Shown: in pieces, positions 912 to 58,388 of the stretch
How positions within the stretch are numbered: the first letter of the stretch is position 1
Layout of the letters: every line of letters starts with the position of its first letter
Source: Leucoraja ocellata
Taxonomy: Eukaryota
Direction: 5' to 3'
DNA: 64,000 bases
NCBI GenBank assembly: GCA_036785375.1
Contig: JAWMAR010000916.1
Coordinates: 372,001 to 436,000 of the forward strand
Translations under genes and position numbers: made by a program
Notes under the pieces: generated by a model
The model's database searches: none
Seen by the model: the letters and a program-made list of their open reading frames with translations, nothing else
What the model was told of the DNA's origin: nothing

Positions 912-2711
912 CCTAGTGTATAGGATATAGAACTAGTGGTCAAAACACTCCAGTGATTTGCTCAAGATTCCACAACTGCAGTTTCTTGTGTCTCCATTAC
1001 ACCAACAGAAGGAAACACAACAAACTACAGCTGCTGGAATCTTACATAGAACAAACGGTGGTGGAGTAACTCAGTGGGTCAGGCAGCACCTGAGGAGGGA
1101 AAGACAGATGACCTTTCGGGTTGAGCCCCTTCTTCAGATTCGTAGCACAGGAAAGGTGATTTGCAGTTCCTCCTTACACCCTGACTCGATCGCACAGTTA
1201 CCTGCAGTTCCACTTTATACCAACAGATGTCCTGCTAGAACAGGCGCTGTTACCTGCAGTTCCACTTTACACCAACAGATGTCCCGCTTGTACAGGCGCT
1301 GGTGCTGGGAGGCAGCAGCACTACCTGCTGTGTCACTGTGCTGCCCCCTTAGATAACAGAACCAGTGTGAACCGATGGTCGACGTGGACTTGATGGGCCA
1401 AAGGGCCTATTTCTATACTGTGCCTCTTGAATAAAGGGTCTTGACCCAAAAAATCATCTGCCCTTTCCCGCCACAGATGGAAAGCCGCTGAGTTCCTCCA
1501 GCACTTTGTGTTTTGGATCTGTTGGTGTAAAGTGGGACTAACCTTGGCTGTGATAACGAGGAACTCTGTAAAGAGTAAAATGTAGAATTATGGGGAGTCA
1601 TTGCAGTGTGAAAGGAGACCAGTCGGCACATTGAGCACACCTCCTATACAGCGTGGAAACAGGCCCTTCAGCCCAACTTGTCCACACCGGCCAACATGTC
1701 CCAGCCATGCTCGTCCCACCGGCCTGCAATTGGTCCATATCCCTCCAAACCTGTCCTATCCATGTACCTGTCTATTTGTTTCTTATATGTTGAGATAGTC
1801 CCTGCCTCAACTACCTCCTCTGGCAGCTCTTTCCATACACCCACCACCCTTTGTGTGGAAAAAGTTACCCCTCAGATTCCTATAAAGTCAGTGAATATAT
1901 GAATAAGTGAATATATTTAAGGCAGAGATAGATTCTTGATTAGTACGGGTGTCAGAGGTTATGGGGAGAAGGTAGGAGAATGGCGTAGATTTGATGGGCT
2001 GAATGGCCTAAATCTGCTCCTATCATTTATGATCTTATGGGTGACGTTTCGGGTCAAGACCCATCTTCAGACTGACTCAGAAGGGTCTCGGCCTGAAACG
2101 TCACCCATTCCTTCTCTCCAGAGATGCTGCCTGTCCTACAGCATTTTGTGTCTGTCTTCAATTTAAACCAGCATCTGCAGTTCTTTCCTGCACACTTATG
2201 ATCTTATACCAGGCCTGTACGAAGCTTTCCAAAAAGGGGGGTGGCATGACAGGATTACAAAAAATTTAATGTGAAATAGTGTGCGCATTGTGCACATCAT
2301 GGGCACGAAGCGTGAAGTCCCTCGATGCCAGCTCTGGGGTTTTAGATGCTCTCTCATGCATTCTGAGCCTTATTTTGGAGCATTTTTGCACCAAATTTAT
2401 GACCAATATTTCAGAAATTAACAGGAATCTGAGAGGTAGCTTTTTCACACAAAGGGTGCTGGGTGTATGGAACGAGTTGCCAGAGGAGGTAGTTAAGGCT
2501 GGGACTATCCTAATGTTTAAGAGACATTTGGACATGGATAGGACAGATTTAGATGGATATATGGGCCAAACGCGTGTGAGTGGGACTAGTGTAGATGGGA
2601 CATGTTGGTCGGTGTGGGCAAGTTGGGCTGAAGGGCCTGTTTCCACACTGCATCAAACTATGACTAAAATGTTAAGAAGAAAAATGCATGTAGATAAGTA
2701 GAGCAGATTTA

Positions 2712-3350
2712 GAAACATAAGAACATAGAAAATAGGTGTAGGACTTGGCCATTCGGCCCTTCGAGCCTGCAACACCATTCAATATGATCATGGCTGATCA
2801 TCCAACTCAGTAACCTGTACCTGCCTTTCTCCATACCCCCTGATCCCTATAGCCACAAGGGCCACATCTAACTCCCTCTTAAATATAGCCAATGAACTGG
2901 CCTCAACTACATTCTGTGGCAGAGAATTCCAGAGATTCACCACTCTCTGTGTAAAAAATGTTTTTCTCATCTCAGTCCTAAAAGATTTCCCCTTTATCCT
3001 TAAACTGTGACACCTTTTTCTGGACTTCCCCAACAACGGGAACAATCTCCCTGCATCTAGCCTGTCCAATCCCTTAAGAATTTTGTAAGTTTCTATAAGA
3101 TCCCCCCCTCAATCTTCTTAATTCTAGCGAGTACAAGCCGAGACCAAAACTGTACGCAATACTCCAGGTGTGGTCTCACCAAGACCCTGTACAACTGCAG
3201 TAGAACCTCCCTGCTCCTATACTCAAATGATTTTGCTGTGAATGCTAACATACCATTCGCTTTCTTCACTGCCTGCTGCACCTGTATTCCTACTTTCAAT
3301 GACTGGTGTACCATGACACCCAGGTCTCGTTGCATCTCCCCTTTCCTTAA
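2712..3350 (-). mobile_element. CR1-type LINE 3' fragment
   Basis: Typical CR1 ORF2 C-terminus ([12 protein letters not shown]; FFTQRVVNLWNSLP) followed by the 3' tail. Confidence 0.85.
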
Positions 3351-4569
3351 TTGAAAGAAGAGTGAAATGTAAAGGCAGAGAGAGGTTTATGGGTGGAAAG
3401 GAACATAGGAAAGGAGGGGGGAGAGTCCTACACAATCATAAACACACACATATTATTTTACATATTAAATATTGGAAGGAAAAACGTTCAGTAAAGTTAG
3501 TCCCTGGTGAGATAGGACTTTACAGTCCGAATGGCCTCTGGGAAGAAACTCTTTCTCAACCTCTCCGTTCTCACAGCATGGCAACGGAGGCGTTTGCCTG
3601 ACCGTTGCAGCTGGAACAGTCCGTTGCAGGGGTGGAAGGGGACTCCCATGATTTTAATGGCTCTGGAGTTGCACCTCCTGATGTATAGTTCCTGCAGGGG
3701 GGCAAGGATTATCAGAACGGAACTCCCCTCCATGGATACAATCTATACACAGCGCTGTCAAAAACGAGCAGAGAGAATCATCAGAGACACACTACATCCA
3801 GCTCACTCCCTGCTCAAACACAAAAACTGCACATACAACCTCAGGCACAGACGAGCGGACAGCATCGTCACAAACAGAACACGCTTTTTTAAGAGCTTCT
3901 TTCCCTCGATGATGTCCTTGGATGATGTGCCCTCCTAAAGTCCACGATCAGCTCCTTAGTTTTTTTGATGTTCAAGAGGAGGCTGTTGTCCTGGCACCAG
4001 AGTGCTAGATCAGCCACCTCCTCCCGGTAGGCCTTCTCATCGTTGTCTGAGATCAGGCCCACCACCACAGTGTCTTCAGCAAACTTAATTATTGAGTTGG
4101 AGCTGAACCTAGCCACACAGTCATGTGTGTACAGGGAGTACAATAGGGGGCTGAGGACGCAACCCTGGGGCGATCCTGTGCTCAGGGTGAGGGGCAAGGG
4201 ACTTCGATGTATTCCCTCCCATCTTGATTACCTGGGGCCTGGCGGTGAGAAAGTCCAGGGCCCAGGCATACAGGGGGGGTGGGTGTTGAGCCCTAATTCC
4301 AGTAGCTTCCCGACCAGTCTGGTGGGGACTATCGTGTTGAAGGCTGAACTGAAGTCTATGAACAGCATCCTCACATAGCCCCCCTTCTGGCCAAAGATCT
4401 TATAGCGAAGCAAGATGGATTACTCACACGCAAACGTGAGGTACGCTCATGGGCGGATTCATGGGTGATTATAGGACACATTTTAGCAACCTGACTCCGC
4501 CATCTTGTTCCGCCATCTTGTTCCGCTTTCTTGCTCCTGCCTTCTTGCTTCCGGCCAAAGATTGGATCC

Positions 4570-4881
4570 GCAGCGGGGAGAAGGAGTGCGGGGCCCGGGG
4601 CAGCGGGGAGAAGGAGTGCGGGGCCCGGGGCAGCGGGGAGAGAGAGTGCGGGGCCCGGGGCAGCGGGGAGAGAGAGTGCGGGGCCCGGGGCAGCGAGGAG
4701 AGAGAGTGCGGGCTCGGGGCAGCGGGGAGAGAGAGTCCGGGGCCCGGGGCAGTGGGGAGAGAGAGTCCGGGGCAGCGGGGAGAGAGAGTGCGGGGCCCGG
4801 AGCAGCGGGGAGAGAGAGTCCGGGGCCCGGGGCAGCGGGGAGAGAGAGTCCGGGGCCCGGGGCAGCGGGGAGAGAGAGTGC
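4570..4881. repeat. GC-rich 30-bp minisatellite, about 10 units
   Basis: Tandem GCAGCGGGGAGAGAGAGTGCGGGGCCCGGG units. It explains the six overlapping repetitive ORFs in this interval. Confidence 0.95.
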
Positions 4882-4960
4882 CCCAAGACAATGTTTCTTA
4901 TTTAATGTCCCTTGTCTAGTCTGAAATAAAGTTCATTATTGGATTAGAAGAAATATAATT

Positions 4961-7900
4961 GACTTCCGGTGGCGCTATGGAGAACTAAGTCCAGCGCCAA
5001 CCAGCTCCGTACCGAGGAAAACAAAAAACGGGAGAAAAATCGGGACCTACCTGCAGCGATCGTAATCTGAAACGGCAGCCTGCGTGACGTCATCAGGCCT
5101 GCGACTTAAGAGCACGAAAAAGCACTCCAATACGCCAAGGAAGTTGGTAACGTGCCTACAGACTGAAGAACCCACACCACTCCTTAGGAGCCAAGGACTA
5201 AGATGACCATCAGATCTAAAAGGACCTTTAAAATTCGTTCAAGAACTTTATAGACACTTGGAAATCGAAAATGATGGAGGACACTGGACAAAAACTGCGA
5301 TTTTTCGAGGGTTTTTCCCTCTTTTTTCTCTTTTTTGTTTTAGCTCTTTTTAGGTTACTAATCATTACTATTATATGTAAATTCATATTTAACTATATAG
5401 GTAACAACTAATACTTATTAAATATCCTTATTTCCACTAAAATTATTAACATTATTAATTCTTATAAAAGTTAATACGGTATAAGATGGATAACAATGAT
5501 CAATAACTAATAGTCTTTGATAAATGAAGAAAGGAATTACATAATATAGTATATAGAAAGATATGTAAGAGGTAAATTAACCTATATGATAATTATGATT
5601 GACGGGTTTCCTTTTCTTTTTTTCGCTCTATCTTTCAATTTAAAATCATTTTGCTGTCTTGAACCTTTCTGCAGGGTTACGTGTTGACACTAGTATACAT
5701 GTGGGTATGTATACATATATATATATATATACGTGTACGTAGGTAGGTGCATATATATTGTGTGGGTATAAGTATGACTAGGTAAATAAGTTTGATACTC
5801 CCAAAGAAGTTGATTGAATGTTAAATATAATTTCCCTTTTTTTTTTTCTTTCCTCTTCCTCGGGCACGGAGCTGGGAATTTTTTCATTTTACAAAGGCTA
5901 CGGAAGTCTTTAGAATTCTAGCCACGTTAGTGTGGCTATCACTAACTACACTAATTGTAGATGTAGTTCTTTTTTCTTCACCCTACACTAACCAACCCTA
6001 TCACTTTTCTTTCTTTAAATATTTCTTTAACTCAAGGTTTGAATGGAAAAACAAGACCAAGGCAAGGAGATATGATCGGAAGAATGATGTATTTGAATTT
6101 AAATTCATCTATCTGAGGTTTGGGAGCAGGGTCAGGTTCTATGTGTTGTTCCTTCTACCCGGTTATAGACCACCACAAAAGCAATATGCAAGATGCTAAC
6201 ATGACAAGAAGGGGTCAGGGAATAACATTTTGTAGTTGGAATGTCAAGGGAATCAATGAACCAATTAAGAGAAGTAAAGTTTTGGCACACCTAAATCAAA
6301 TCAAAACAGATATAATATTTCTTCAAGAGACACATCTTAAAAAGGAATCACAACACAGACTTAAAGCTAAGTGGATCGCTGAATCATATCATTCTTCTTT
6401 TTCCCACAAGTCAAGAGGAGTAGCAATAGTAATTCGTAAAGGAATTCCTTTTGCGACCTCCTCAATAATAGTGGATATGGATGGCAGATATATTATAGTG
6501 GTTGGAGAGTTAAATGGTGAAAAAGTGATCCTTCTAAATGTTTATGGGCCTAACTTCGATAACCCCACTTTTTTTAACAAAACATTTAATAAAATTCCTG
6601 AATTTGCACAATACAAATTAATAATTGGAGGAGACTTCAATTGTACATTAGACCCATACTTAGATAGATCATCAAGGCAAAAAAAATCAACATCCAACTC
6701 AAGTGTTTTTTTAAATTCATTTATTAATACCACTAATATTAAGGATATCTGGAGAATAGAAAACCCAACCGGACGGGAATATTCATTTTATTCACCAGTA
6801 CACAAAACATACTCAAGAATAGATTACTTTTTAGTTGATTCTACGTTTATTCCATTTACTTATAATTCAAAATATCATAACATTATAATCTCAGATCACG
6901 CACCGGTAACATTCATGATTAAATTAAATGGAATGTCCGAGAAACAAACATATTGGAGACTTAACCCGCAAATCTTGAACGAAAGATCATGCCAGGAATA
7001 TATTATTAAACAAATTCAAATATTTTTTGAGATAAATGACAACCCTGACACACCTGCTTCTCTTATGTGGGAGACGTTCAAAGCGTATGTTCGAGGTACA
7101 TTAATCTCTGCCCAAGCATTTTATAATAAAGAAAACAGGATTAAACAAAAAGCACTGGAAAGTGAAATTAAGCAACTAGATACAGAAAACGCGAGAACGC
7201 CATCTACGTTAAAACATAATAAAATTGCTGTACTGAAATATAAATTAAATAAAATGTACTCAGAACAAGTAATAAAACTTTATCAAAAAACCAAACAATT
7301 ACAGTTTGAATTTGGAGACAAACCACAAAAATTATTAGCACGCCAGCTGCGAAAAATGGAAGGGGAAAAAATAATTCATAAAATTAGAACAGAGACAGGA
7401 GAATTATTAAAAATGCCCAAGGATATAAATGATAGATTTCTACAATACTATCATAACCTTTATTCAACTAAAACTGTAGCACAATCAGAAGGAATAGCAG
7501 ATTTTTTAATAAAATGTAATTTAAAAGGTTTAGATTCAAAGGATAGAGAATTATTAGAAAGGGAAATTACGATAAAGGATATTGAGGAGTCTATTGGCTC
7601 TCTTAAAAATGGTAAGGCAGTAGGGCCAGATGGTCTAGGTTCAGAATTTTACAAGAAATTTCATGATTTGCTGTGCCCACGCTTGCAAAGACTATATGAT
7701 TATATCTACACCCAACAGAAACTCCCAGATACCTTAAATGAATCTATAATAACGCTTATTCCTAAAGCTGATAAAGATCCGGAAGATCCGGGATCATACA
7801 GAGCAATTGCACTTCTGAATACAGACCAGAAAATACTAACTAAAATACTAGCACGTAGATTAAGTACAGTGATGAATAAATTAATACACCCTGACCAAAC

Positions 7901-10345
7901 AGGCTTTATTCAGAAACGGTATTCATATTATAATCTAAGAAGATTATTTAATATTATATATACCAAGAGAATTATTAATGAAGATTTAGCAATAATCTCA
8001 CTTGACGCTGAAAAAGCATTTGATCAGGTCGAATGGCCTTATTTATTTTCGGTGATGGAAAAGATGCAGCTAGGGGAGAAATTTTGCACATGGATAAAAC
8101 TGCTATACACAAATCCTACGGCCAGAATACTTACCAACCAAAGACTGTCATCTAAATTCAGTCTATCTAGAGGGTGTAGACAAGGATGCCCGTTATCTCC
8201 ATTACTATTTGCACTTGCAATTGAGCCACTTGCAGAAAGAATTAGGGGGCATCCGGAAATATATGGGTATAACAGTAAAGACACAGTGAATAAAATTTCT
8301 CTATATGCAGATGACGTATTAATTTACATCACAAAACCAGAAATTAGTATCCCAAACCTATTAAAACTAATAAACCAATTCGGTGCACTTTCAGGATACA
8401 GAATAAATTGGAATAAAAGTGAAATTATGCCAATAAGGGAACATAATAAACAGATAATACAACAATTCCCATTTAAAGTAGTAAATGAAAAATTTAAATA
8501 TCTAGGTATCTATGTAACTAAGATATATACATCATTATTTAAAGCAAATTTCCCCCCATTATTGAATAAATTACATAAGAATATCCAATACTGGAAAACA
8601 TTACCTATTTCAATGGTTGGTAAAATTAATGCCATAAAAATGATTTTTTTACCGCAAATATTATACCTTTTTCAGACGATTCCGATATACCTGGCAAAAA
8701 ACTTCTTTAAAAAATTGGACTCTATTGTTAATGATTTTATCTGGGATTATAAGAATCATAGGATAAGCAAAAGACACCTGTGTAAATCAAAAAATAATGG
8801 AGGCTTGGTTTTACCTAACTTTTTGTTTTATTACTGGGCAGTTAATATTAAAAATATGAACTTCTGGTTGGGAGAAATAGACCAGCAACCAGACTGGTTA
8901 AAACTGGAAAGGGAAGATTGTATGCCTTATGATATTGGTTCGATATTATTTGCTACGTCTAAATTAAACAAGAAAATTTATAAGGAAAACCCTATAATAT
9001 TTAGTGCTATAAAAATTTGGAAACAATTAAAAAAGACATTAAAATTAGATAACTTATCTCTTTTTCTTCCAATTGTGAATAATTCATTGTTTAAACCTTC
9101 ATGTTTAGACGGGGGTTTTACACAATGGAAGAATAATGGAATTAAAAATATAGGACACCTTTACAAAGAAGGCTCTTTTTTGACATTTCAGGAGTTGCAA
9201 CAGATTTATGGACTTCGAGGAAATGATTATTTCAGATATCTTCAACTCAGAGATTATGTTAAATCGAATTCTAAAAATTTTCGAAATAGAAACCCAGAGA
9301 TTCTTGATGAATGTTGGAATAAGCATCCTAATACAGAAAAATTAATATCTTATATATATAATATCTTATTAGATAGTGACATTCCTTTGACGGACTTACA
9401 CAGACAAGCATGGGAAAAAGAATTAAACCAGGTAATAACGAAAGACACTTGGGAAGAAAGTCTACAACACATACATCAATGTTCACTAAACGCGAGACAT
9501 TCTCTAATACAATTTAAAGTAATACATAGGTTACACTACGCCAAAACAAAATTACATAAAATTTTTCAACATATCTCACCTATATGTGATAAATGTCAAC
9601 ATTTAGAAGCTACGTTATCGCACATGTTTACAAACTGTACAAAAATTAAAAAATTTTGGGTAAATATTTTTAGTATAATATCCAAAGTAATCAACACACA
9701 ACTGGAACCCAACTCAAAATTAATAATACTCGGAATATTAGAATCAAATCAAACACTTAGAATAACACAAAGAAACTTTATCGATTACAGTTTAATAACA
9801 GGAAAAAAATTAATCCTAAAATTTTGGAAAGGCCCTACGGCCCCCACAATCAAAATGTGGATTATAGAAATGACGGAGACCTTAAACATGGAAAGAATCA
9901 GATTTTCCCTGTTGGATAAACAGGAATTATTCGTTGGAACATGGTCTCCTTTTATTGATTATTTAAAGGGTCAGAATAGTTCAGCACAGGAACCTGACTA
10001 GCACCCGGACTAAAGATTGGATGAAATGCTATACTTCGAAATGTACGAACATATCTCGAATGATGTTTTTAAACTTTAACAAATTTTTCCATTCTTCTTC
10101 AATTACCTTTTTCACTCCTTTTCCTTTTTTTATTTTTTATTTTAGTTTTCTTTTTCCTTCTTCCCTCTCTCTATTTCATCTATCCCTTTAGCCCTATCTA
10201 GTTATAAAAAAAAACGAAGAAAAATGCAAAAAGTATTGGAGACAATGTAATAATAACTGACAATATTATCAATTTAAAAATGATGTAACAATGATGTAAT
10301 AGATGTAATAGATCATGTACCTATCTCCAATAATAAAAAATTAAA

Positions 10346-10368
<23 letters not shown>
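4961..10368 (+). mobile_element. L1-clade LINE, end-to-end copy with poly(A) and TSD, lacking ORF1
   Basis: Begins GACTTCCGGTGGCG. Poly(A) at about 10347-10368. TSD AGAAGAAATATAATT at 4946-4960 and 10369-10383. Confidence 0.92.
6186..10001 (+). CDS. L1 ORF2p (APE endonuclease + reverse transcriptase + C-terminal Cys motif), intact
   Basis: Motifs SWNVKG, FLQETH, GGDFN, SRIDY, SDH, LDAEKAFD, QGCPLSP, YADD and CDKC...HMFTNC. No stops. Start at ATG 6186, or the in-frame ATG at 6141. Confidence 0.95.
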   Translation: MQDANMTRRGQGITFCSWNVKGINEPIKRSKVLAHLNQIKTDIIFLQETHLKKESQHRLKAKWIAESYHSSFSHKSRGVAIVIRKGIPFATSSIIVDMDGRYIIVVGELNGEKVILLNVYGPNFDNPTFFNKTFNKIPEFAQYKLIIGGDFNCTLDPYLDRSSRQKKSTSNSSVFLNSFINTTNIKDIWRIENPTGREYSFYSPVHKTYSRIDYFLVDSTFIPFTYNSKYHNIIISDHAPVTFMIKLNGMSEKQTYWRLNPQILNERSCQEYIIKQIQIFFEINDNPDTPASLMWETFKAYVRGTLISAQAFYNKENRIKQKALESEIKQLDTENARTPSTLKHNKIAVLKYKLNKMYSEQVIKLYQKTKQLQFEFGDKPQKLLARQLRKMEGEKIIHKIRTETGELLKMPKDINDRFLQYYHNLYSTKTVAQSEGIADFLIKCNLKGLDSKDRELLEREITIKDIEESIGSLKNGKAVGPDGLGSEFYKKFHDLLCPRLQRLYDYIYTQQKLPDTLNESIITLIPKADKDPEDPGSYRAIALLNTDQKILTKILARRLSTVMNKLIHPDQTGFIQKRYSYYNLRRLFNIIYTKRIINEDLAIISLDAEKAFDQVEWPYLFSVMEKMQLGEKFCTWIKLLYTNPTARILTNQRLSSKFSLSRGCRQGCPLSPLLFALAIEPLAERIRGHPEIYGYNSKDTVNKISLYADDVLIYITKPEISIPNLLKLINQFGALSGYRINWNKSEIMPIREHNKQIIQQFPFKVVNEKFKYLGIYVTKIYTSLFKANFPPLLNKLHKNIQYWKTLPISMVGKINAIKMIFLPQILYLFQTIPIYLAKNFFKKLDSIVNDFIWDYKNHRISKRHLCKSKNNGGLVLPNFLFYYWAVNIKNMNFWLGEIDQQPDWLKLEREDCMPYDIGSILFATSKLNKKIYKENPIIFSAIKIWKQLKKTLKLDNLSLFLPIVNNSLFKPSCLDGGFTQWKNNGIKNIGHLYKEGSFLTFQELQQIYGLRGNDYFRYLQLRDYVKSNSKNFRNRNPEILDECWNKHPNTEKLISYIYNILLDSDIPLTDLHRQAWEKELNQVITKDTWEESLQHIHQCSLNARHSLIQFKVIHRLHYAKTKLHKIFQHISPICDKCQHLEATLSHMFTNCTKIKKFWVNIFSIISKVINTQLEPNSKLIILGILESNQTLRITQRNFIDYSLITGKKLILKFWKGPTAPTIKMWIIEMTETLNMERIRFSLLDKQELFVGTWSPFIDYLKGQNSSAQEPD

Positions 10369-10376
<8 letters not shown>

Positions 10377-10619
10377 TATAATTGTGTGTGTTATATACAT
10401 TTATATAATTTTCATGTATGTGTGTTTATAAACATTTTATTCCTTAACAAGAATCAACATAATTATGAACTAACAGAATTATGAATCTAACCCTATAATC
10501 ACGCACAAAAGTCCCCCCCTGTCAATCACCCTGCGAGTCGGGTCGGTTCCGGTTACTACAAAATCAACTCAAACACTGTTTGTGAGCCATTTAAAAAGAA
10601 ATGATTTAAAAAACATTAA

Positions 10620-16808: not shown

Positions 16809-17854
16809 TTTAAAAACCCATAAATGGGGTTATAATTTGTGTTAATAAATTTTATGATTTCAATAACGAATCATGTGCAATTATGTTAACACTATTCCTC
16901 CCACAGTCAAGGCAGACGTGTGCATGGACTCGTTTCCACGGCATGAAATCACCGAGCTTTGAAATCTTCACGTAGTCACTCACGTGACTCCGAAGTAAAA
17001 TAGTAAGATTAAACGAGAACTTACCAGTTTGAAGTTTGATCTGTATTTTATGAGGAGTTACGATGAGGGATTACGTGCCCTCCGCTCCCACCCTGATCAT
17101 ATACTTAACTGGTACCTCTTCTCTAATCTTACTATGTTTAGTCATTACAGTTATCTGTGAATTCACACCGCTGTTTTGAAGAATGACCCGCATGCGTCCT
17201 AGCGGGCTTCTTCACGTAATCCCTCATCGTAACTCCTCATAAAATACAGATCAAACTTCAAACTGGTAAGTTCTCGTTTAATCTTACTATTAAACATTGT
17301 CACAAATGCCAGCCTGTTGTACAGTAATAAGTCTTTAACAGCTAATCTCGGAGCTGCCTGCGAAAACTTACCAGGAAAAAGTGCTCCGATCGCGGGACAT
17401 AGGTACTCGCGGTAAAGTGAAGCCGCAGTCTCAATTAATAAGCGGCCGATTCACGAACACGGAGCCGTGGATCATCTCCGCGGGCGGGTGTGGGAGGCTG
17501 TACATAGTGCCGCCTATAGCGGCCGTTATCGGACCCCGACAACGGGAAAAAACCGGAATGGAATTCCACTGCAATGGAAGCCTATAAATAGCGATCGATA
17601 TCCCTCCGTTTTTTTCCGGTTGTCGGGGTCTGATAACAAGTTTCAGGGGTGATTTATATAATTTTGTTTACACAATATGTGAAAATTTCATGTAGTTTGG
17701 TGACTTGGCTCACGAAATCCTTTTTCTAGACACATTTTTGATGCTCGGCCCACAACCTATTTCCAAAAATCACTGAGCAGTTATCCAGTAAATTTACTAC
17801 TAATAATCCTCTTATACCAATCGATTTATACTAATATACCATTGGTGGCGGTTC

Positions 17855-17994
17855 GGCCGTGGGCTGCACGGCACTGGACACTCACTCGACGTCGGTGGCG
17901 ATTACTGGACTTGGCCGTGGGCTGCACGGCACTGGACACTCACTCGACGTCGGTGGCGATTACTGGACTTGGCCGTGGGCTGCACGGCACTGGA
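17855..17994. repeat. 58-bp tandem repeat, 2.4 copies
   Basis: Unit GGCCGTGGGCTGCACGGCACTGGACACTCACTCGACGTCGGTGGCGATTACTGGACTT starts at 17855, 17913 and 17971. Confidence 0.95.
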
Positions 17995-19282
17995 AAGCGT
18001 TTAAATTAAGCAACCACCGTCATTGTTCTGCTTGCTGGGCTTCTAGTTTTTAGCTTCTAGCTGCGCTGCCCTGCTACAGCACTGCTTGTTGCCTGGCCAT
18101 TGTGCGTTACCGTTCCAACTTTTTGCCCGCCAAATACATACTTGTCTTTAACTATCTGTTTGATCTTGAGAAAAGCCTCAAAAAGATCGCAATTCTGTTC
18201 CTGCTAACGGAATTTACATCCTCGTCTCCAAATTGTTATGTATTGGTGCTGGAAACTGACTTAAATAAGACTCGGAACACACAGGTACTTAACAAGCTTC
18301 TTGTATTGAAATTGCCATCTTGAGTCTCTCTGCACATGCGTACAATTGCACAAGACATTCCAATATGCTAATCATATTCTCATACACAAGATTTCCCCAT
18401 CATAAATCCATGCTGACATCTCCACTGGGCACAGGAACACAGGTTCCGTAGCCCGACCAGGGATTGCATTTCTTCCCCTCTCCTTTCCTTAGCCTAGCTT
18501 TCCAATTAAGTCCTGAAGACTTCTTGCAAACACGTGAGAGGCTTCTCAGAGCAACTTTGAAAAGTTGCTCACCTGGCCTTGCCTTTCCCCTTCACCAGCC
18601 AGCCAGCCATCCAGCTGCTTGCTGCCTCTCCTCCTCAGCCTTAAACCTGGCTCGTGAGACATCCTTAAAGGCCTTGTCATTACCTCTGGTGCCACCCACG
18701 CACCCTCCGACCCATCCAGGCACACTAGCGACAGACAGCCAGACAGACAGACAGACAGACAGACACAGGCCTTGCCAATACACAGCCGACAGCGCAGTGC
18801 GCCGGCCGCCCTCCAGACTACGCTCCCAGAACGTGCGGTCAGGGCTTCTGTCGGGGGGACGGGTCCGCCACATTGACCAAACCATGGCTGGCCCTCTGGC
18901 TGCTCAATGGTGCTAAATTCACCCCTGCCCCCGTCAGAGTCAGTGAGTCCTACCTTAGCGGTGTGGTACTCGCTGTGGTTGACGTGCAGCTCAGTCTCAT
19001 CTCTTCAGACCAACATCACCCAGATTGTGGCGACTTGATTGGCAGAGCCGACAATTGTGACTTTGAAGAATTTGCTGATGATTTTTTTCTCCTTCAGGAA
19101 GTTTGTGTTGAAATGCGTCCTCTTTTCCCTTGAAAGTATCCACTGGTGAAATAAAGGAAGGTTGACTTGAGCATTTGACTTGAGCAGTCCGTCAACACAG
19201 ACACGCACGCACGCAGACGCAGAGTGAGAGAAGGCAGCAGGCAGACATGCAGCTTTTGAGCAAGCGTGAGGAGGAATTTTTG

Positions 19283-19297
19283 TCTTTTCTTTTGAAC
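19283..19297 (-). promoter_or_regulatory. Candidate snRNA 3' box
   Basis: GTTCAAAAGAAAAGA about 23 nt downstream of U2. It resembles the GTTTN0-3AAARNNAGA consensus. Confidence 0.45.
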
Positions 19298-19319
19298 TTT
19301 GAAAATCTCCCAAAAGGGA

Positions 19320-19469
19320 TGTGCACCGTTCCCAGAGGCACTGCAATACTGGGTCGATGCGTGGAGTGGACGGAGCAAGCCCCTATTCCATCTCCCTGTT
19401 CCAAAAATCAATTTAATATATGGTCCCTAGATAAGGGACGTATCAGATATTAAACTGATAAGAACAGAT
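19320..19469 (-). ncRNA. RNU2: U2 snRNA gene, 5'-truncated (nt ~38 to 3' end) by a retro-insertion
   Basis: The minus strand reads ATCTGTTCTTATCAGTTTAATATCTGATACG...GATTTTTGG (Sm site)...CTCCACGCATCGAC...GTATTGCAGT...GAACGGTGCAC. The first 37 nt are absent. Confidence 0.95.
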
Positions 19470-19981
19470 TTTTTTTCTTTTTTCTTTTTTCCCATTTTCT
19501 CCACAAATTTATTGTTTCACAAAGAGCAAGCCAAACATTTATCCCCGGCGGTTTGAAACGAGGCCTTCGACCCGATCTGAGACGACACTCTTAAATCAAA
19601 CAACCCCTTCCCTGCTGTTCCCCGAAGAGCCTCCATTTTTCTGGAGCGTCACCTTAATGGTCCCCCCCCTCACCTACGATGCGGCCACCTGGGTGAGGGG
19701 TTCCTCCAGGTACTGGACTAAAGCCTCGGCCTTAGCCTGCAACATGCCGAATCCCACGGTCTCACGGGCGTACATACACAGCAGCAGGTTGGCCATCCTC
19801 GTGTTGGCCACTTGGCCCTCCATGCAGTCCATGAGGATGAACCAGAGCGGGTCCTCGTTGAAGGCCATGTGCCCGTTCTTGGCGTACGCTGCCCAGATGT
19901 TGCTGGCGATGGCGGCCGTTACCCGAGCGTCAGTGTTGCTGTAACCAGCGTAGGCCAGCAACGAACCCTCATTGTTCAACA
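19470..19981 (-). pseudogene. LAMTOR2: LAMTOR2 (p14/ROBLD3) processed retrocopy, 5'-truncated
   Basis: Intronless [13 protein letters not shown]...[16 protein letters not shown]...FILMDCMEG...[16 protein letters not shown]...[16 protein letters not shown] (19981-19674). It is followed by a 3' UTR, AATAAA at 19513-19508 and an A-tract at 19490-19470. Confidence 0.93.
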
Positions 19982-20905
19982 TCTTCCTTCTAAACTCCAC
20001 AGAGTACAGGCCCAGTGGAGGAGTAGGCCATTCGGCCCTTCGAGCCAGCACCGCCATTCAATATGATCATGGCTGATATTCCATAATCAGTACCCCAATC
20101 CGGCTTTTTCCCCATATCCCTTGATTCCCTCAGCCCAAAGAACTAAATCTAACTCACTTGAAAACATCCAGTGAATTGGCCTCCACTGCCTGCTGTGGCA
20201 GAGAATTCCACTGATTCACAACTCTCTGGGTGAAAAAGTTTTTCCTCATCTCAGTCCTAACAGGCCAATCACTTATTCTTATACTGTGACCCCTGGTTCT
20301 GGACGCCCCCAACACAGGGAATAGTGCTGCATCTAGCCTGTCCAAACCTTTAAGAATTTTATATGTTTCTATATGATATCCTCTCATCCTTCTAAATTCC
20401 AGCGAATACAAGCCCATAGACCCATTCTTTCATCATATGTCAGTCCCGCCATCCCGGGAATTAACCTGGTGAACCTACACTGCACTCCCTCATTAGCAAT
20501 AATATCCTTCCTCAAATTAGGAGACAAAATTGCACACGATACTCCAGGTGCGGTCTCACCAGGGCCCTATACAACTGCAGTAGGACCTCCTTGCTCCTAA
20601 ACTCAGATCCTCTCGCAATGAAGCTTTCTTCACTGCCTGCTGTATCTGCATGCTTACTTTCAGTGACTAATGTACAAGCACACGCAGGTCTCGTTGCACC
20701 TCCCCTTCTAAACTTGACAACATTCAGGTAATAATCTGCCATCCTGTTCTTCCACCAAAGTGGATAACCTCACATTTATCCACATTATATTGCATCTGGC
20801 CATTCACCCAACCTATCCCAAATCACCCTGCAGCCACATAGCATCCTCCTTGCAGCTCACACTGTCACCCAGCTTTGGGTCATCCGCAAACTTGGAGATT
20901 GCATT
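19982..20905 (-). mobile_element. CR1-type LINE fragments
   Basis: [21 protein letters not shown] and RPHLEY motifs, plus the CR1 3' tail. Confidence 0.85.
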
Positions 20906-21439
20906 TAACTCCCTCGTCTGCTGCCCTTATCTCTACTCCAGCTCCCCACGGGCCTCCACCAGCAACTCCGCCGACCCCCGCCTCTCCACCGGCCACCAGT
21001 GGGTTAGAACCGTCACCTCACCAGAGTTCCAGCACCAGGCCCACAACCTCCACCATGCAGACAGCACGTGGTCTGACTCTGCTGGGGCCTAGTGCTCTCC
21101 CCACACCTCCCCTTACAGGGAAAACCCATCAGTGGTGATGACTCTGCTGGGTCCTAGTGCCCCCCCCCCCCCCCTACAGGGAAGACCCATACAGGAAATT
21201 CCCAGCCCCTCTCCTTCAGCTCCCGGGCCCCCTTTTGGACTCCGGGCCCGGGTATGATGTACCCCCAGCACCCCCCGCTCATAGGCCCTGTGTATACGTA
21301 CACGCATATGTGAACAAAACACTGTGTGTGGTATGTATCTTTGTTAGGTTCCTAAAAATGAGCTCAACAAATTTATGTTATTTACAACCCCTTCATGACC
21401 ACCGGAAAAACCCCAAACGACCCCCATGTGGGTCACGAC

Positions 21440-22440
21440 TCCCAGGTTAAGACCCTTGCAAACCTCCAGACTCTCTTTGCAAATCCACACTCTGCAAAGA
21501 GGTGGGCAACCGTCTCCTCTCCATAGCAGCCGTCCCGATGGCAGCGTGCGCTGGTAGTGAGGATCCGACGGTGCAGGAAGGATCTGACTGAGAGGGCTCC
21601 CCTCACCGCCAGCCAAGCCAGGTCTTGGTGCTTGTTGGTGAGTTCTGGCGATGAATCATTTTGCCAGACAAGCTGGGCAGTCTGCTCTGGGAACCACGCC
21701 ACCGGATCCATGGTGTCATTTCCCTGCAGTGCCTGCAGGACATTCCGTGCTGACCACTTGTGGTCAAAGGTGTTGGTCCGGAAGAACCTTTCCACAGACG
21801 ACAGATGGGGCGGCAATGTCCAGCTGACTGGCACATTGCGTGGCATCTGCGCCAGGCCCATCCTTCGCAACACCGGGGACAGGTAGAACCTCAGCAGGTA
21901 GTGACACTTAGTGCCCACGTGCCTTGGCTCTACACTCCGCCTGATGCAACCACACACAAAGGTGGCCATCAGGGTGAGGGCGACGTTGGGCACGCTTTTA
22001 CCCCCATTGTCTGGTGACTTGTACATTGTGGCTCGTCGCACCCGGTCCATCCTCGACCCCCAGATGAACTGGAAGACGGCCCGGGTGATCCCTGTGGCGT
22101 AGGAGGGAGGGACAGGCCACACCTGCGCCAAGTAATGCAGCCCCAAGAGCACCTCACACCTGATGACCACATTTTTCCCCATCATAGAGAAATGTGCTTC
22201 CACAGCTCCAGTTTTTTCCCCACCTTGGCTATCCGCTCCAGCCAATTCTTGTCACACGCCTCAACCCTCCCCCCGAGCCAGATCCCCAGCACCTTCAAGA
22301 AGTCAGGCTTGATGGTGAAAGGGAATGCAGATCAGTTGGGCCAGTTGCCAAAGAGCATGGCCTCGCTCTTCCTGCGGTTCACCCTGGCTCCGATGTATGT
22401 AAATAGTTGCCCACAAAGGACGCTGACGAAGTTACAAATT
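21440..22440 (-). mobile_element. Tx1-clade (Keno-like) ORF2 fragment
   Basis: GARVNRRKSEAM...GKNVVIRCEVL...RAVFQFIWGSRMDRVRR...GGKSVP...LAWLAVRGAL...C..DGC..EETVAHLFAEC. Confidence 0.75.
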
Positions 22441-22603
22441 CCCCCTGCGTCAGATGCCCCTTTGTTCTTCCCCCTCCCCCTCATGGCGGTCCCCCCATGC
22501 CAAGTCATCCTTTGTTCATTTCCCTTCCCTTTCCAGCTGAACCATGTTGCCACCCTTCTTCAGACCCAAACCAACCCAAAATATTAGGTGTCCATTCCCT
22601 CCA

Positions 22604-25167
22604 CTGATGCTGCCTGACCCGCTGAGTTCCTCCAGCACTTTGCCCCTAGTGTATAGGATATAGAACTAGTGGTCAAAACACTCCAGTGATTTGCTCAAGA
22701 TTCCACAACTGCAGTTCCTTGTGTCTCCATTACACCAACAGAAGGAAACACAACAAACTACAGCTGCTGGAATCTTACATAGAACAAACGGTGGTGGAGT
22801 AACTCAGTGGGTCAGGCAGCACCTGAGGAGGGAAAGACAGATGACCTTTCGGGTTGAGCCCCTTCTTCAGACTCGTAGCACAGGAAAGGTGATTTGCAGT
22901 TCCTTCTTACACCCTGACTCGATCGCACAGTTACCTGCAGTTCCACTTTATACCAACAGATGTCCCGCTAGCACAGGCGCTGTTACCTGCAGTTCCACTT
23001 TACACCAACAGATGTCCCGCTTGTACAGGCGCTGGTGCTGGGAGGCAGCAGCACTACCTGCTGTGTCACTGTGCTGCCCCCTTAGATAACAGAACCAGTG
23101 TGAACCGATGGTCGACGTGGACTTGATGGGCCAAAGGGCCTATTTCTAAGCTGTGCCTCTCGAATAAAGGGTCTTGACCCAAAAAATCGTCTGCCCTTTC
23201 CCGCCACAGATGGAAAGCCGCTGAGTTCCTCCAGCACTTTGTGTTTTGGATCTGTTGGTGTAAAGTGGGACTAACCTTGGCTGTGATAACGAGGAACTCT
23301 GTAAAGAGTAAAATGTAGAATTATGGGGAGTCATTGCAGTGTGAAAGGAAACCAGTCGGCACGTTGAGCACACCTCCTATAACAGCGTGGAAACAGGCCC
23401 TTCAGCCCAACTTGTCCACACCGGCCAACATGTCCCAGCCACGCTCGTCCCACCGGCCTGCAATTGGTCCATATCCCTCCAAACCTGTCCTATCCATGTA
23501 CCTGTCTAACTGTTTCTTATACGTTGGGATAGTCCCTGCCTCAACTACCTCCTCTGGCAGCTCTTTCCATACACCCACCACCCTTTGTGTGGAAAAAGTT
23601 ACCCCTCAGATTCCTATAAAGTCAGTGAATATATGAATAAGTGAATATATTTAAGGCAGAGATAGATTCTTGATTAGTACGGGTGTCAGAGGTTATGGGG
23701 AGAAGGTAGGAGAATGGTGTAGATTTGATGGGCTGAATAGCCTAAATCTGCTCCTATCATTTATGATCTTATGGGTGACGTTTCGGGTCAAGACCCATCT
23801 TCAGACTGATTCAGAAGGGTCTCGGCCCAAAACGTCACCCATTCCTTCTCTCCAGAGATGCTGCCTGTCCTACAGCATTTTGTGTCTGTCTTCAATTTAA
23901 ACCAGCATCTGCAGTTCTTTCCTGCACACTTATGATCTTATACCAGGCCCGTACGAAGCGTTCCAAAAAGGGGGGTGGCATGACAGGATTACAAAAAATT
24001 TAATGTGAAATAATGTGCACACTGTGCACATCATGGGCACGAAGCGTGAAGTCCCTCGATGCCAGCTCTGGGGTTTTAGATGCTCTCTCATGCATTCTGA
24101 GCCTTACTTTGGAGCATTTTTGCACCAAATTTATGACCATTATTTCAGAAATTAACAGATATCTGAGAGGTAGCTTTTTCACACAAAGGGTGCTGGGTGT
24201 ATCTAACGAACTGCCAGAGGAGGTAGTTAAGGCTGGGACTATCCTAATGTTTAAGAGACATTTGGGACACGTACATGGATAGGACAGATTTAGATGGATA
24301 TATGGGCCAACGCGTGTGAGTGGGACTAGTTTAGATGGGACATGTTGGTCGGTGTGGGCAAGTTGGGCTGAAGGGCCTGTTTCCACACTGCATCATTCTA
24401 TGACTAAAAAGTTAAGAAGAAAAATGCATGTAGATAAGTAGAGCAGATTTAGAAACATAAGAACATAGAAAATAAGTGTAGGGCTTGGCCATTCGGCCCT
24501 TCGAGCCTGCAACACTATTCAATATGATCATGGCTGATCATCCAACTCAGTATCCTGTACCTGCCTTCTCTCCATACCCCCCTGATCCCTATAGCCACAA
24601 GGGCCACATCTAACTCCCTCTTAAATATAGCCAATGAACTGGCCTCAACTACATTCTGTGGCAGAGAATTCCAGAGATTCACCACTCTCTGTGTAAAAAA
24701 TGTTTTTCTCATCTCAGTCCTAAAAGATTTTCCCTTTATCCTTAACTGTGACACATTTTTCTGGACTTCCCCAACAACGGGAACAATCTTCCTGCATCTA
24801 GCCTGTCCAACCCCTTAAGAATTTTGTAAGTTTCTATAAGATCCCCCCCAATCTTCTAAATTCTAGCGAGTACAAGCCGAGACCAAAGCTGTACGCAATA
24901 CTCCAGGTGTGGTCTCACCAAGACCCTGTACAACTGCAGTAGAACCTCCCTGCTCCTATACTCAAATCATTTTGCTGTAAAATGCTAACATACCATTCGC
25001 TTTCTTCACTGCCTGCTGCACCTGCATTTCTACTTTCAATGACTGGTGTACCATGACACCCAGGTCTCGTTGCATCTCCCCTTTCCTTAATTGAAAGAGG
25101 AGTGAAATGTAAAGGGCAGAGAGAGGTTTATGGGTGGAAAGGAACATAGGAAAGGAGGGGGGAGAGT
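22604..25167. repeat. Segmental duplication, copy 2 (paralog of 1-3426)
   Basis: Colinear with copy 1 and lacks the 49-911 transposon. Confidence 0.9.
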
Positions 25168-25761: not shown

Positions 25762-26566
25762 CATGTCCGTGCCACCCCGTACACTATCAAACACACGAGG
25801 GACAATTTACAATTTTTACCAAAGACAATTAATTTACAAACATTCACGTATTTGCAGTGTGGGAGGAAACTGGAGCACCCAGAGAAAACCCACGCGGTCC
25901 ATGAGGAGAAAGTACAAACTCCACACAGACAGCACCCGTAGTCAGGATCGAACCCGGGTCTCTGGCGCTGGAAGGCAGCAACTCTACCGCTGCACCACCG
26001 AGTTTTACTGAGGTTCACCATGGATTCCTGTAACTGCGGTTGCGAGCCTAAAGCCACTAGAGGGGGTATGTTACCCAGCCCTCAATATCTCCAATCATTG
26101 TTTCCATTTTACTCTCAAACTTGCCTGAATAAAATCAGTAATCCCTATTGTATGTTGGCAATCATTATTTGAATCATGCTACATCAATAATGTTCATGGA
26201 TTCAATGATTGCATTTCAATGATATCAATGATATGGATGAGAACATACAGGGCAAGATTCGCAAGTTTGCAGATGATACAAAAGAGGGTGGTTTTACAGT
26301 GAAGATGGGTGTGAAAAATTGCAGCAGGAACTTGATCGATTGGCCAGGTGGGCGGAGGAATGGTTGATGCAATTTAAAACAGAGAAGTGTGAGGTGTTGC
26401 ATTTTGGGAAGTTTAACATGGGCAGGACCTACACAGTGAATGGTCGGGCTGTGGCTAGTGTTGTAGAGCAGAGGGGTCTAGGAGTACAGGTGCATGGTTC
26501 CTTGAAGGAGGAGCCGCAGGTGGATAGGGAGGTCAAAAAGGCTTTTGGCTCATTGGCCTTCATCAG
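25762..26566. repeat. Duplicated block (paralog of ~57587-58388): SINE + unique segment + CR1 fragment
   Basis: Colinear near-identity. ORFs 26202..26402 and 58026..58226 are nearly identical. Confidence 0.9.
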
Positions 26567-53240: not shown

Positions 53241-53299
53241 ACTCTGTCTCGAACTACTCCAGGGCATATCAAAGCGAGGGTTACTCCTGGTACTCACTT

Positions 53300-57391: not shown

Positions 57392-58388
57392 CCTTACAAC
57401 CTTGCATTAGTTTCCTTGCCACTGGCTGCTCACTCTGGCTGCTGTGCACATCACCCATGATGAACTTCACCAGAACTGTGCCGTGCAAGGTCCTGGCCAC
57501 AGACGTAACATGTGCAGGAAAGAACTACAGATGATGGTTTAAATCGAAGATGGACACGAAATGCTGGAGTAACTCTGCGGGACAGGCATGTCCGTGCCAC
57601 CCCGTACACTATCAAACACACGAGGGACAATTTACAATATTTACCAAAGACAATTAATTTACAAACATTCACGTCTTTGGAGTGTGGGAGGAAACTGGAG
57701 CACCCGGAGAAAACCCACGCGGTCCATGGGGAGAAAGTACAAACTCCACACAGACAGCACCCGTAGTCAGGATCGAACCCGGGTCTCTGGCGCTGGAAGG
57801 CAGCAACTCTACCGCTGCACCACCGAGTTTTACTGAGATTCACCATGGATTCTATTAACTGCGGTTGCGAGCTAAAACCACTAGAGGGGGTATGTTACCC
57901 AGCCCTCAATATCTCCAATCATTGTTTCCATTTTACTCTCAAACTTGCCTGAATAAAATCAGTAATCCCTATTGTATGTTGGCAATCATTATTTGAATCA
58001 TGCTACATCAATAATGTTCATGGATTCAATGATTGCATTTCAATGATATCAATGATATGGATGAGAACATACAGGGCAAGATTCGCAAGTTTGCAGATGA
58101 TACAAAAGAGGGTGGTTTTACAGTGAAGATGGGTGTGAAAAATTGCAGCAGGAACTTGATCGATTGGCCAGGTGCGCGGAGGAATGGTTGATGCAATTTA
58201 AAACAGAGAAGTGTGAGGTGTTGCATTTTGGGAAGTTTAACATGGGCAGGACCTACACAGTGAATTGTCGGGCTGTGGCTAGTGTTGTAGAGCAGAGGGG
58301 TCTAGGAGTACAGGTGCATGGTTCCTTGAAGGAGGAGCCGCAGGTAGATAGGGAGGTCAAAAAGGCTTTTGGCACATTGGCCTTCATC

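What the first reader, a model, noticed from the sequence alone, without database searches (positions are those of the whole stretch)
19320..19981. Cellular mRNA (LAMTOR2) retro-inserted precisely at the Keno/Utopia target site of a U2 snRNA gene
Seen: on the minus strand, an intronless LAMTOR2 CDS, 3' UTR, AATAAA and, 17 nt later, an A-tract join directly to TCTGTTCTTATCAG, i.e. U2 nt 38/39. The rest of U2 follows with its Sm site, a 3'-box-like motif and non-poly(A) flank, so the target looks like a real U2 gene rather than a processed copy. Established: the Tx1-clade element Keno and the R2-like Utopia insert at this U2 position, and L1-group enzymes retrotranspose polyadenylated mRNAs in trans. 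Inference: a sequence-specific retrotransposon wrote a host mRNA into its own target site, making a site-directed processed pseudogene. U2 arrays could then act as landing pads that capture mRNAs. This would be of interest for retrogene evolution and for RNA-templated targeted gene insertion.
Basis: partly seen in the sequence, partly recalled or inferred. Interest (0 to 1): 0.9.

Follow-up and report, generated by a model that had tools for sequence, protein, structure and literature searches.

The report
LAMTOR2 mRNA tail in U2 gene
A spliced, poly(A)-tailed piece of the host gene LAMTOR2 is joined, to the nucleotide, to the spot in a U2 snRNA gene where U2-specific jumping genes insert, but it looks like the tail of a larger mosaic retro-copied unit and not a lone mRNA copy.

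Summary
On the minus strand, LAMTOR2 residues 24-125, a stop, a 183-nt 3'UTR, AATAAA and a 22-nt A-rich tail run straight into TCTGTTCTTATCAGTTTAAT, i.e. U2 from nt 39 to its 3' end. Published Keno and Utopia insertions have the same 3' flank.

A U2-site-specific, poly(A)-primed LINE enzyme best explains the 3' junction. The LAMTOR2 piece is not a simple 5'-truncated processed pseudogene:
- Its 5' edge sits where alternative LAMTOR2 protein models diverge, consistent with the exon 1/2 boundary.
- That edge is fused in frame to a 31-nt internal CR1 piece.
- Upstream, in the same orientation, lie a 3'-clipped CR1 copy, 0.5 kb of unknown sequence, and an L1-group ORF2 fragment broken about 105 codons before its natural end.
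- No U2 nt 1-38 and no target-site duplication were found.

A Leucoraja erinacea RefSeq protein (125 of 127 residues identical) carries the same CR1-LAMTOR2 fusion and the same derived substitutions. This scan's unchecked first-stage notes report the same junction and the same module order on other pieces of this genome, so the scan found this before on other DNA.

Copy number, the parental 3'UTR and the enzyme's identity are untested.

The parts
19316..19468 (-). U2 snRNA gene remnant, nt ~39 to the 3' end (Sm site and 3' stem-loops present); nt 1-38 absent
   Evidence: Rfam RF00004 118.6 bits. Unique match of TCTGTTCTTATCAG at 19468-19455.
19283..19297 (-). 3'-box-like motif about 20 nt downstream of the U2 3' end
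   Evidence: GTTCAAAAGAAAAGA has 2 mismatches to GTTTN0-3AAARNNAGA. 6% of random 60-nt windows do as well. Consensus taken from a passage of PMC9006982.
19469..19490 (-). A-rich tail (AAAAAAG AAAAAAG AAAAAAAA), directly abutting U2 nt 39
   Evidence: Sequence; TRF. It is the only A-run of 7 or more on the minus strand in 19400-23200.
19491..19673 (-). Presumed LAMTOR2 3'UTR with AATAAA at 19513-19508, 17 nt before the tail
   Evidence: Contiguous with the CDS; AATAAA position. Identity with the parental UTR was not testable.
19674..19982 (-). LAMTOR2 coding part, residues 24-125 plus stop, with no intron at the conserved ...QAK|A... position
   Evidence: PDB phmmer E 3.5e-53; Pfam Robl_LC7. 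It differs at 10-11 of 102 residues from the elasmobranch LAMTOR2 models, which are near-invariant over these residues. It starts where 12 of 12 alternative-N-terminus models diverge.
19983..20013 (-). 31-nt internal CR1-like piece (encodes [11 protein letters not shown]) fused in frame to the LAMTOR2 part
   Evidence: The same fusion is in P0001.
20014..20965 (-). CR1-like LINE 3' portion (RT FADD region to near its end), lacking the last ~22 nt of the CR1 tail; the 5' edge is approximate
   Evidence: blastn to 7 other CR1 copies in the window at 77-84%; alignment with six of them; reading.
20966..21452 (-). About 0.5 kb of unidentified sequence with a G15 run (C15 on + at 21160-21174)
   Evidence: No Rfam hit. 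No repeat elsewhere in the window. ORFs not in the collection.
21453..22470 (-). L1-group (Tx1-like by recall) ORF2 fragment running from the end of RT to the zinc knuckle. It is 5'-truncated and broken after ...RVWR, about 105 codons before the family's natural stop. The 5' edge is approximate.
   Evidence: Pfam zf-RVT 5e-11. Family alignment with 9 elasmobranch relatives. The family profile hits only human L1 ORF2p in PDB, E 1.3e-5. Only 31% identity over 70 aa to the window's own L1 ORF2.
22471..22644 (-). G-rich stretch plus a ~95-nt fragment of a common hairpin repeat. It is unclear whether this belongs to the unit. It ends at the breakpoint of a 2.5-kb duplicated segment.

Best explanation
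A U2-gene-specific, poly(A)-dependent LINE enzyme (Keno-like, L1/Tx1 group) nicked the bottom strand of a genuine U2 snRNA gene between nt 38 and 39. It primed reverse transcription on the A-tail of an RNA that was not its own. The 3' module of that RNA is LAMTOR2 exons 2-4 plus 3'UTR.

The copied RNA or cDNA was a mosaic, not the canonical mRNA. The LAMTOR2 part begins at the exon-2 boundary and is fused to CR1 sequence. Either a TE-derived upstream exon was spliced to exon 2, or the RT switched templates.

The unit probably extends through the clipped CR1 copy and the unknown 0.5 kb to the L1-group ORF2 fragment. That fragment may be the remnant of a resident Keno copy hit a second time, or the 5' part of one chimeric RNA.

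The 5' junction was resolved with loss of U2 nt 1-38 and the promoter, which killed this U2 copy. The fused unit then came to exist at more than one locus.

Shown: the anatomy and the exact junction. Inferred: the enzyme, the order of events and the extent of the unit.
For: The junction A(n)|TCTGTTCTTATCAGTTTAAT equals the published Keno/Utopia 3' flank. That is 1-2 of about 188 possible positions in a small target. The U2 part is complete to its 3' end, has no A-tail and has a 3'-box-like flank, so it looks like a gene and not a retro-copied snRNA. AATAAA plus 17 nt plus tail is typical of an mRNA 3' end. The intron after ...QAK is absent. The LAMTOR2 edge sits where 12 of 12 alternative models diverge. 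All four modules share one orientation, and only one A-tail exists in 3.8 kb. The ORF2 fragment belongs to the L1 group. P0001 shares the CR1-LAMTOR2 fusion and 9 derived substitutions, so the fusion predates the split of the two copies. Loss of the 5' U2 part is described for Utopia. Trans-mobilisation by target-specific Tx1 elements has a precedent in SINEU/Tx1-Mar (PMC4494074 passages).
Against: No Keno or Utopia element was shown in this genome. The Tx1-clade membership and U2 specificity of the ORF2 fragment are untested. The same orientation of three upstream TE pieces has a 1-in-8 chance. The junction CR1|LAMTOR2 carries 3-4 extra or ambiguous nucleotides (AAG, and ATG for CTG), so splice origin and template switch cannot be told apart. 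Neighbouring CR1 copies read ATGAG..., not GT..., at the would-be donor. P0001 may be the same locus in another individual or species, which would not prove several copies. The multi-copy claim otherwise rests on unchecked first-stage notes. The 3'-box match is weak (6% by chance).
Confidence: 0.55

Rival explanations
1. A canonical LAMTOR2 mRNA was copied in trans by Keno/Utopia and 5'-truncated. The CR1, unknown and ORF2 pieces upstream are just the pre-existing DNA to which the cDNA end was joined after a deletion of U2 nt 1-38 and upstream sequence.
For: Same 3' junction evidence as above. A TE-rich landscape surrounds the site. 5' deletions at U2 insertions are described. The clipped CR1 pieces could be old debris.
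Against: The truncation would fall by chance within about 4 nt of the exon-2 boundary, roughly 1-2% for a ~600-nt mRNA by my estimate. A first-stage note reports the same Tx1 + unknown + CR1 + LAMTOR2-poly(A) order twice elsewhere with different 5' ends (unchecked). I verified that order only in this window.
Confidence: 0.2
2. An ordinary, non-site-specific L1 event. A poly(A) RNA was inserted by an L1 enzyme into the T-run opposite the A-tail of a Keno copy already resident at this U2 site. The exact U2 junction is therefore inherited from the older Keno insertion.
For: A young L1 with intact EN+RT ORF2, a 24-A tail and a 15-nt TSD lies 9 kb away, so poly(A)-type retroposition is active. An L1-group ORF2 fragment lies upstream in the same orientation.
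Against: No TSD, no second A-run and no native ORF2 C-terminus or 3'UTR lie between the ORF2 fragment and the new material. The ORF2 fragment is only 31% identical over 70 aa to the window's L1.
Confidence: 0.1
3. No retroposition at this site. The adjacency is a DNA-level rearrangement or an assembly artefact that joins an A-rich retrocopy end to a U2 fragment.
For: The region is repeat-dense. A 2.5-kb segment (22645-25167) is duplicated at 912-3426 with a breakpoint at the unit's upstream edge. No read check was possible.
Against: A random break would not fall at the one published nucleotide. 14 of 24 listed runs hold at least half of the sampled words of 18600-22700, though that does not address the junction itself. 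First-stage notes report the same junction on another piece (unchecked).
Confidence: 0.07

Closest known systems
Keno (Tx1-clade, APE-type) insertions in U2 snRNA genes
   Same: Identical 3' flank TCTGTTCTTATCAGTTTAAT. The U2 copy is destroyed. An A-rich tail sits at the junction (that Keno ends in an A-tail is my recall). Host range includes fish (passages of PMC4640811, PMC4494074 and PMC6136364).
   Different: The sequence next to the tail is a host mRNA 3' end, not a Keno 3'UTR. The only LINE ORF2 piece is 1.9 kb upstream, C-terminally broken and of untested clade.
Utopia (RLE-type) insertions in U2 snRNA genes
   Same: Same nucleotide: U2 resumes at nt 39. Frequent absence of the 5' U2 part. 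Occasional tandem insertions.
   Different: No RLE-type protein was seen in the unit. Among chordates, Utopia is listed only for reptiles in that paper. A poly(A)-primed junction fits the L1 group better (established knowledge, recalled).
SINEU mobilised by Tx1-Mar in crocodilians (Kojima 2015, PMC4494074, passages)
   Same: Non-self RNAs are delivered to the target preferred by a Keno-related, target-specific Tx1 LINE. Composite elements are built by additions at the 5' end.
   Different: SINEU elements are short, snRNA-headed and abundant, and they target a Mariner transposon. Here the 3' module is a spliced protein-coding mRNA and the target is U2.
L1 processed pseudogenes and L1 template-switch chimeras (U6/L1 type); 5'-transducing SVA spliced from MAST2
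   Same: Spliced, poly(A)-tailed host RNA copied by a LINE enzyme. Mosaic of several RNAs in one orientation. An upstream exon spliced onto a retroposon body is known for SVA (passage).
   Different: No TSD and no TTTT/AA-like target. The snRNA lies 3' of the poly(A) and carries gene flank, so it is the target, not a co-copied template.

Membership tests
Processed (retro-copied) mRNA | Introns absent at positions where the parent has them | tested here: met
   4 of 24 fetched LAMTOR2 models diverge or carry an insert right after GML(Q/K)AK, marking an intron. The window reads ...[11 protein letters not shown]... without a break. The parental skate gene itself was not available.
Processed (retro-copied) mRNA | Poly(A) signal followed by an A-tail at the 3' end | tested here: met
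   AATAAA 19513-19508, then 17 nt, then a 22-nt tail 19490-19469.
Processed (retro-copied) mRNA | Target-site duplication flanking the insert (L1 type) | tested here: not met
   No U2 5' motif, not even GTAGTA, on either strand in 19400-23200. No match to ATCAAGTGTAGTA with up to 2 mismatches nearer than 36997.
Processed (retro-copied) mRNA | 3'UTR identical in origin to the parental gene's 3'UTR | not testable with these tools
No skate LAMTOR2 mRNA could be fetched.
Keno (U2-specific Tx1 LINE) insertion | 3' junction with U2 resuming at TCTGTTCTTATCAGTTTAAT (nt 38/39) | tested here: met
   against passages of PMC6136364 and PMC4640811.
Keno (U2-specific Tx1 LINE) insertion | Body of the insert is a Tx1-clade APE+RT element up to its own 3'UTR | tested here: not met
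   The tail-proximal 0.5 kb is LAMTOR2. An L1-group ORF2 fragment lies upstream but is broken about 105 codons early. No APE domain is in the unit. The clade was not determined, because no named Tx1 reference was reachable.
Keno (U2-specific Tx1 LINE) insertion | U2 5' part upstream of the element | tested here: not met
   5'-truncated copies often lack it, as stated for Utopia.
Utopia (RLE LINE) insertion | RT plus C-terminal zinc finger and PD..D/ExK endonuclease | tested here: not met
   Only zf-RVT was found in the unit's ORF. The family profile matches only human L1 ORF2p in PDB.
L1 template-switch chimera (snRNA/mRNA) | snRNA at the 5' side, poly(A) at the 3' end, TSDs | tested here: not met
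   U2 lies 3' of the A-tail, is followed by non-A flank with a 3'-box-like motif, and has no TSD.
Non-autonomous retroposon family mobilised by a target-specific LINE (SINEU-like) | Several copies sharing the 3' module, with different 5' ends, at the partner's target | tested here: inconclusive
   One copy in this window. P0001 (125 of 127 aa identical) may be a second locus or the same one. Notes s1-884761 and s1-884998 report more copies but are unchecked.

The most novel reading that the evidence does not exclude
Skates harbour a small family of non-autonomous retroposons whose 3' end is a captured host mRNA tail (LAMTOR2 exons 2-4, 3'UTR, poly(A)). A Keno-like LINE repeatedly writes this family into the nt 38/39 site of U2 snRNA genes. 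That would show in nature that this enzyme takes any poly(A) RNA, while its endonuclease alone fixes the address. It would be a natural precedent for RNA-templated, site-directed insertion of a coding sequence at a multicopy safe-harbour gene.
Probability: 0.3. Interest if true: 0.75.

Novelty: new variant of a known kind. Interest (0 to 1): 0.55.

Why it matters
Target-specific LINEs are usually thought to copy their own RNA, and their few known passengers are short SINE-like RNAs. A spliced protein-coding mRNA tail at the exact Keno/Utopia nucleotide would show two things. First, the address is set by the endonuclease and the DNA target. Second, the template choice is loose and depends on poly(A). 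This bears on how retrocopies arise in genomes that have few classical L1 pseudogenes. It also bears on current efforts to use site-specific retroelement proteins for transgene insertion. In addition, the same fused ORF is annotated in RefSeq as a protein-coding 'LAMTOR2-like' gene of the little skate. On the present evidence it is a TE-mRNA chimera and not a paralogue.

Tried and rejected
Looked for the missing U2 5' half and found none.

Looked for a second U2 or an array. Rfam finds one U2 in 64 kb, and an E-value scan of 17000-24000 adds nothing credible.

Asked whether the ORF2 fragment belongs to the window's young L1. It does not: 31% identity over 70 aa.

Tried to find other copies by exact ORF look-up. 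0 of 8 window ORFs are in the collection.

Tried to classify the ORF2 family. The protein atlas gave only unnamed zf-RVT/RVT_1 clusters.

Tried to find the skate parental LAMTOR2 in the clusters of P0004, P0005 and P0002. No skate member was among the 28 listed.

Kojima and Fujiwara 2004 is not held, so what I say of Keno comes from passages in three later papers.

Literature searches for a host mRNA at a site-specific LINE target and for a LAMTOR2 retrocopy (none of the 12 papers listed of 401 holds the word LAMTOR2) showed no such report among the papers listed. This is not proof that none is in print.

Considered a DIRS-carried U2 cassette, as first-stage notes report elsewhere. Rejected because those cassettes are 5' or internal U2 parts, while this one is nt 39 to the 3' end with gene-like flank, and the two ORFs tested just downstream of U2 (18464-18916 and 19005-19346) have no Pfam hit.

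Considered intron retention for the CR1|LAMTOR2 edge. The two bases before the inferred exon start are AA (AC in P0001 by its residue), not AG, and there is no pyrimidine tract.

The bacterial promoter/terminator scan is irrelevant here.

Supplements of PMC4640811 (S1 Fig, 3' junctions) were not opened and may show the tails of Utopia and Keno.

Full report
WHAT IS THERE. All coordinates in this paragraph are read on the minus strand. From 19982 to 19674 an open frame encodes 102 residues that match LAMTOR2 chains of the PDB over residues 24/25 to the C-terminus (E 3.5e-53; Pfam Robl_LC7). The stop is followed by 183 nt (19673-19491). This stretch contains AATAAA at 19513-19508, which leaves 17 nt before a 22-nt tail at 19490-19469. 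The tail is 20 A and 2 G and can be read as AAAAAAG twice plus A8. The next base starts TCTGTTCTTATCAGTTTAAT. Rfam calls U2 there at 118.6 bits, the only U2 in the window. The alignment is confident only from AUCUGUUCUUAUCAG onward, and the first ~37 model positions are replaced by the A-rich tail. The U2 part runs to its natural 3' end at about 19316 and is followed by non-A sequence. That flank holds GTTCAAAAGAAAAGA about 20 nt downstream, two mismatches from the 3'-box consensus quoted in PMC9006982 (passage). A match this good is found in 6% of random 60-nt windows, so it is only weak support for a true gene flank.

THE JUNCTION IS THE PUBLISHED ONE. Passages of Kojima and Jurka 2015 (PMC4640811) state three things. 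U2 downstream of Utopia insertions starts at nucleotide 39. The 3' flanking U2 sequence is identical for Keno. The 5' U2 fragment is often missing. A passage of PMC6136364 gives the Keno 3' target as TCTGTTCTTATCAGTTTAAT, which is letter for letter what follows the tail here. Whether A38 belongs to U2 or to the tail cannot be told. A random break would hit this position in 1-2 of about 188 cases. The bottom-strand sequence at the nick is not T-rich as a classical L1 site would be (established L1 knowledge, recalled). A site-specific enzyme is therefore the natural reading.

THE LAMTOR2 PIECE IS NOT A PLAIN TRUNCATED mRNA COPY. Four observations support this.

First, its 5' edge is special. I fetched 24 LAMTOR2-type proteins. 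Eleven have the canonical N-terminus, and one is the skate chimera P0001. The remaining 12 are alternative or partial models from teleosts, birds, frogs, rays, sharks and a chimaera, plus one unnamed Logan sequence. All 12 keep LLNNEGS and differ upstream. This marks a conserved intron, and the window's LAMTOR2 homology begins exactly there, with M in place of the first L. Four of the 24 diverge or carry an insert after GML(Q/K)AK, marking another intron that is absent in the window. So the template was spliced.

Second, the edge is fused in frame to a 31-nt internal piece of a CR1-like LINE (20013-19983). That piece is preceded by a CR1 3' portion (about 20965-20014) which lacks the last ~22 nt of the CR1 tail seen in other copies.

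Third, further upstream lie about 0.5 kb of unidentified sequence and then an ORF2 fragment (about 22470-21453) with Pfam zf-RVT. Its relatives are widespread in elasmobranchs: 26 hits, the best at 89% in Rhinoraja. Their alignment shows that the native protein continues about 105 residues beyond ...RVWR, where the window copy breaks off. A profile of this family matches only human L1 ORF2p among PDB chains (E 1.3e-5). It is only 31% identical over 70 aa to the intact L1 ORF2 that lies at 6120-10001. 'Tx1-like' is my recall of its motifs and the wording of a first-stage note; it was not tested.

Fourth, all four modules and U2 share one orientation. There is only one A-run of 7 or more in 19400-23200. 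No U2 5' motif and no target-site duplication were found.

OTHER COPIES. A protein search with the 127-aa chimeric ORF found XP_055522045.1, 'ragulator complex protein LAMTOR2-like isoform X2' of Leucoraja erinacea, on a 222,349-bp contig. It is identical at 125 of 127 residues. It has the same CR1-derived N-terminus and the same nine substitutions that set the window copy apart from the elasmobranch LAMTOR2 models, which are near-invariant over these residues. The window differs from those models at 10-11 of 102 residues. So the fusion arose once, diverged from its parent, and only later gave the two sequences. Whether they are paralogues, alleles or orthologues I cannot tell, because the window's species is not given.

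This scan's first-stage notes list the same LAMTOR2/U2 junction on another piece of this genome (s1-884761). They also list a 'Tx1 + unknown + CR1 + LAMTOR2-poly(A) unit present twice with different 5' ends' on another piece (s1-884998). These notes are unchecked. What I could check is that the same module order is present in this window. If the notes hold, the unit was formed before it multiplied, and different 5' ends suggest retroposition of the whole unit.

HOW IT MOST LIKELY WORKS. Inferred: a Keno-like enzyme nicked the U2 gene at nt 38/39 and primed on the A-tail of an RNA ending in the LAMTOR2 3'UTR.

The mosaic can have arisen in three ways that I cannot separate:
(a) One chimeric transcript in which TE-derived upstream sequence was spliced to LAMTOR2 exon 2. 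This explains the exon-boundary edge. However, the junction has 3-4 extra or ambiguous bases, and the neighbouring CR1 copies show ATGAG, not a GT donor, at that point.
(b) Serial template switches of the RT. The internal-to-internal CR1|CR1 joint looks like one.
(c) A second hit at an already occupied site, with the ORF2 fragment being the resident Keno copy clipped by the new insertion's 5' joint. Tandem insertions are reported for Utopia.

The 5' joint removed U2 nt 1-38 and the promoter. Immediately upstream of the unit, at 22645, begins a 2.5-kb segment that is duplicated at 912-3426 (97.3%). The homology stops exactly at that point, consistent with a deletion or rearrangement at the 5' joint.

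RIVALS. There are three:
- An ordinary L1 insertion into the tail of a resident Keno. A young L1 with a 24-A tail and a 15-nt TSD lies at 4946-10385.
- A rearrangement or assembly artefact.
They are weighed in the Rival explanations section. None explains the exact nucleotide, the exon-boundary edge and the shared fusion together as well as the main reading does.

I have no read support for the junction, no depth and no RNA evidence, and I kept those places out of all later searches. The look-up of sequencing runs listed 24 runs. Fourteen hold at least half of the sampled words of 18600-22700, and six possible RNA runs hold 0.13-0.15. The collections open to DNA search hold no vertebrate genomes. 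The continuity of CDS, UTR, signal and tail is the only argument for it.

COMPARISON AND NOVELTY. The event works like a Keno insertion at its 3' end and like an L1 processed pseudogene or chimeric retrocopy in its content. It fails membership of Keno proper because the body next to the tail is host mRNA. It fails membership of L1 chimeras because the snRNA is the target and there is no TSD. The nearest precedent for a target-specific Tx1 LINE carrying foreign RNA to its own address is SINEU/Tx1-Mar (PMC4494074, passages). My searches listed no report of a spliced coding mRNA tail at the U2 site. I rate it a new variant of a known kind.

VERDICT. The structure is real in the assembly, and the 3' junction is very probably the work of a U2-specific LINE. 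Interest 0.55. It would be higher (about 0.75) if repeated, independent insertions of the LAMTOR2-tailed unit into U2 genes are shown.

Noticed in passing
window 4946-10385 (+): Young L1-type element. The ORF 6120-10001 (1293 aa) has Exo_endo_phos and RVT_1 domains. It has a 24-A tail and a 15-nt target-site duplication (GAAGAAATATAATTG). This agrees with first-stage note s1-885257.
   Followed up: partly
window 912-3426 and 22645-25167: A 2.5-kb mosaic segment is duplicated at 97.3% identity, 21.7 kb apart. The homology ends exactly at 912/22645, right at the upstream edge of the unit studied here.
   Followed up: partly
P0001 = XP_055522045.1 (Leucoraja erinacea): RefSeq annotates the CR1-LAMTOR2 fusion ORF as a protein-coding 'LAMTOR2-like isoform X2'. 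Its first 24 residues are CR1-derived, so the model is probably a retro-copied chimera and not a paralogous gene. An isoform X1 was not seen within the length range searched.
   Followed up: partly
window 19469-19490 (-): The tail is not pure poly(A) but three units of a 7-nt A6G-like period (TRF period 7, 3 copies). This could be decay of a poly(A) or a tail repeat typical of the mobilising LINE.
   Followed up: no
window 25762-26565 and 57587-58389: An 804-nt stretch is repeated at 98% identity, 31.8 kb apart. The repeat continues as an exact 300-nt match (26048-26347 and 57872-58171).
   Followed up: no
window 22703-22769 and 23765-23848: Hairpins give sub-threshold hits to unrelated miRNA families (E 0.05-0.1). 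They are probably arms of short inverted-repeat elements that are common in this window.
   Followed up: no
window 4535-4921: Tandem array with a ~30-nt period, 10 or more copies, just upstream of the L1.
   Followed up: no
window 51710-53272 (-): A CR1-type RT ORF also matches Pfam ALKBH8_N (1.3e-12). This is a known kind of cross-hit of that model on LINE C-terminal regions (my recall).
   Followed up: no
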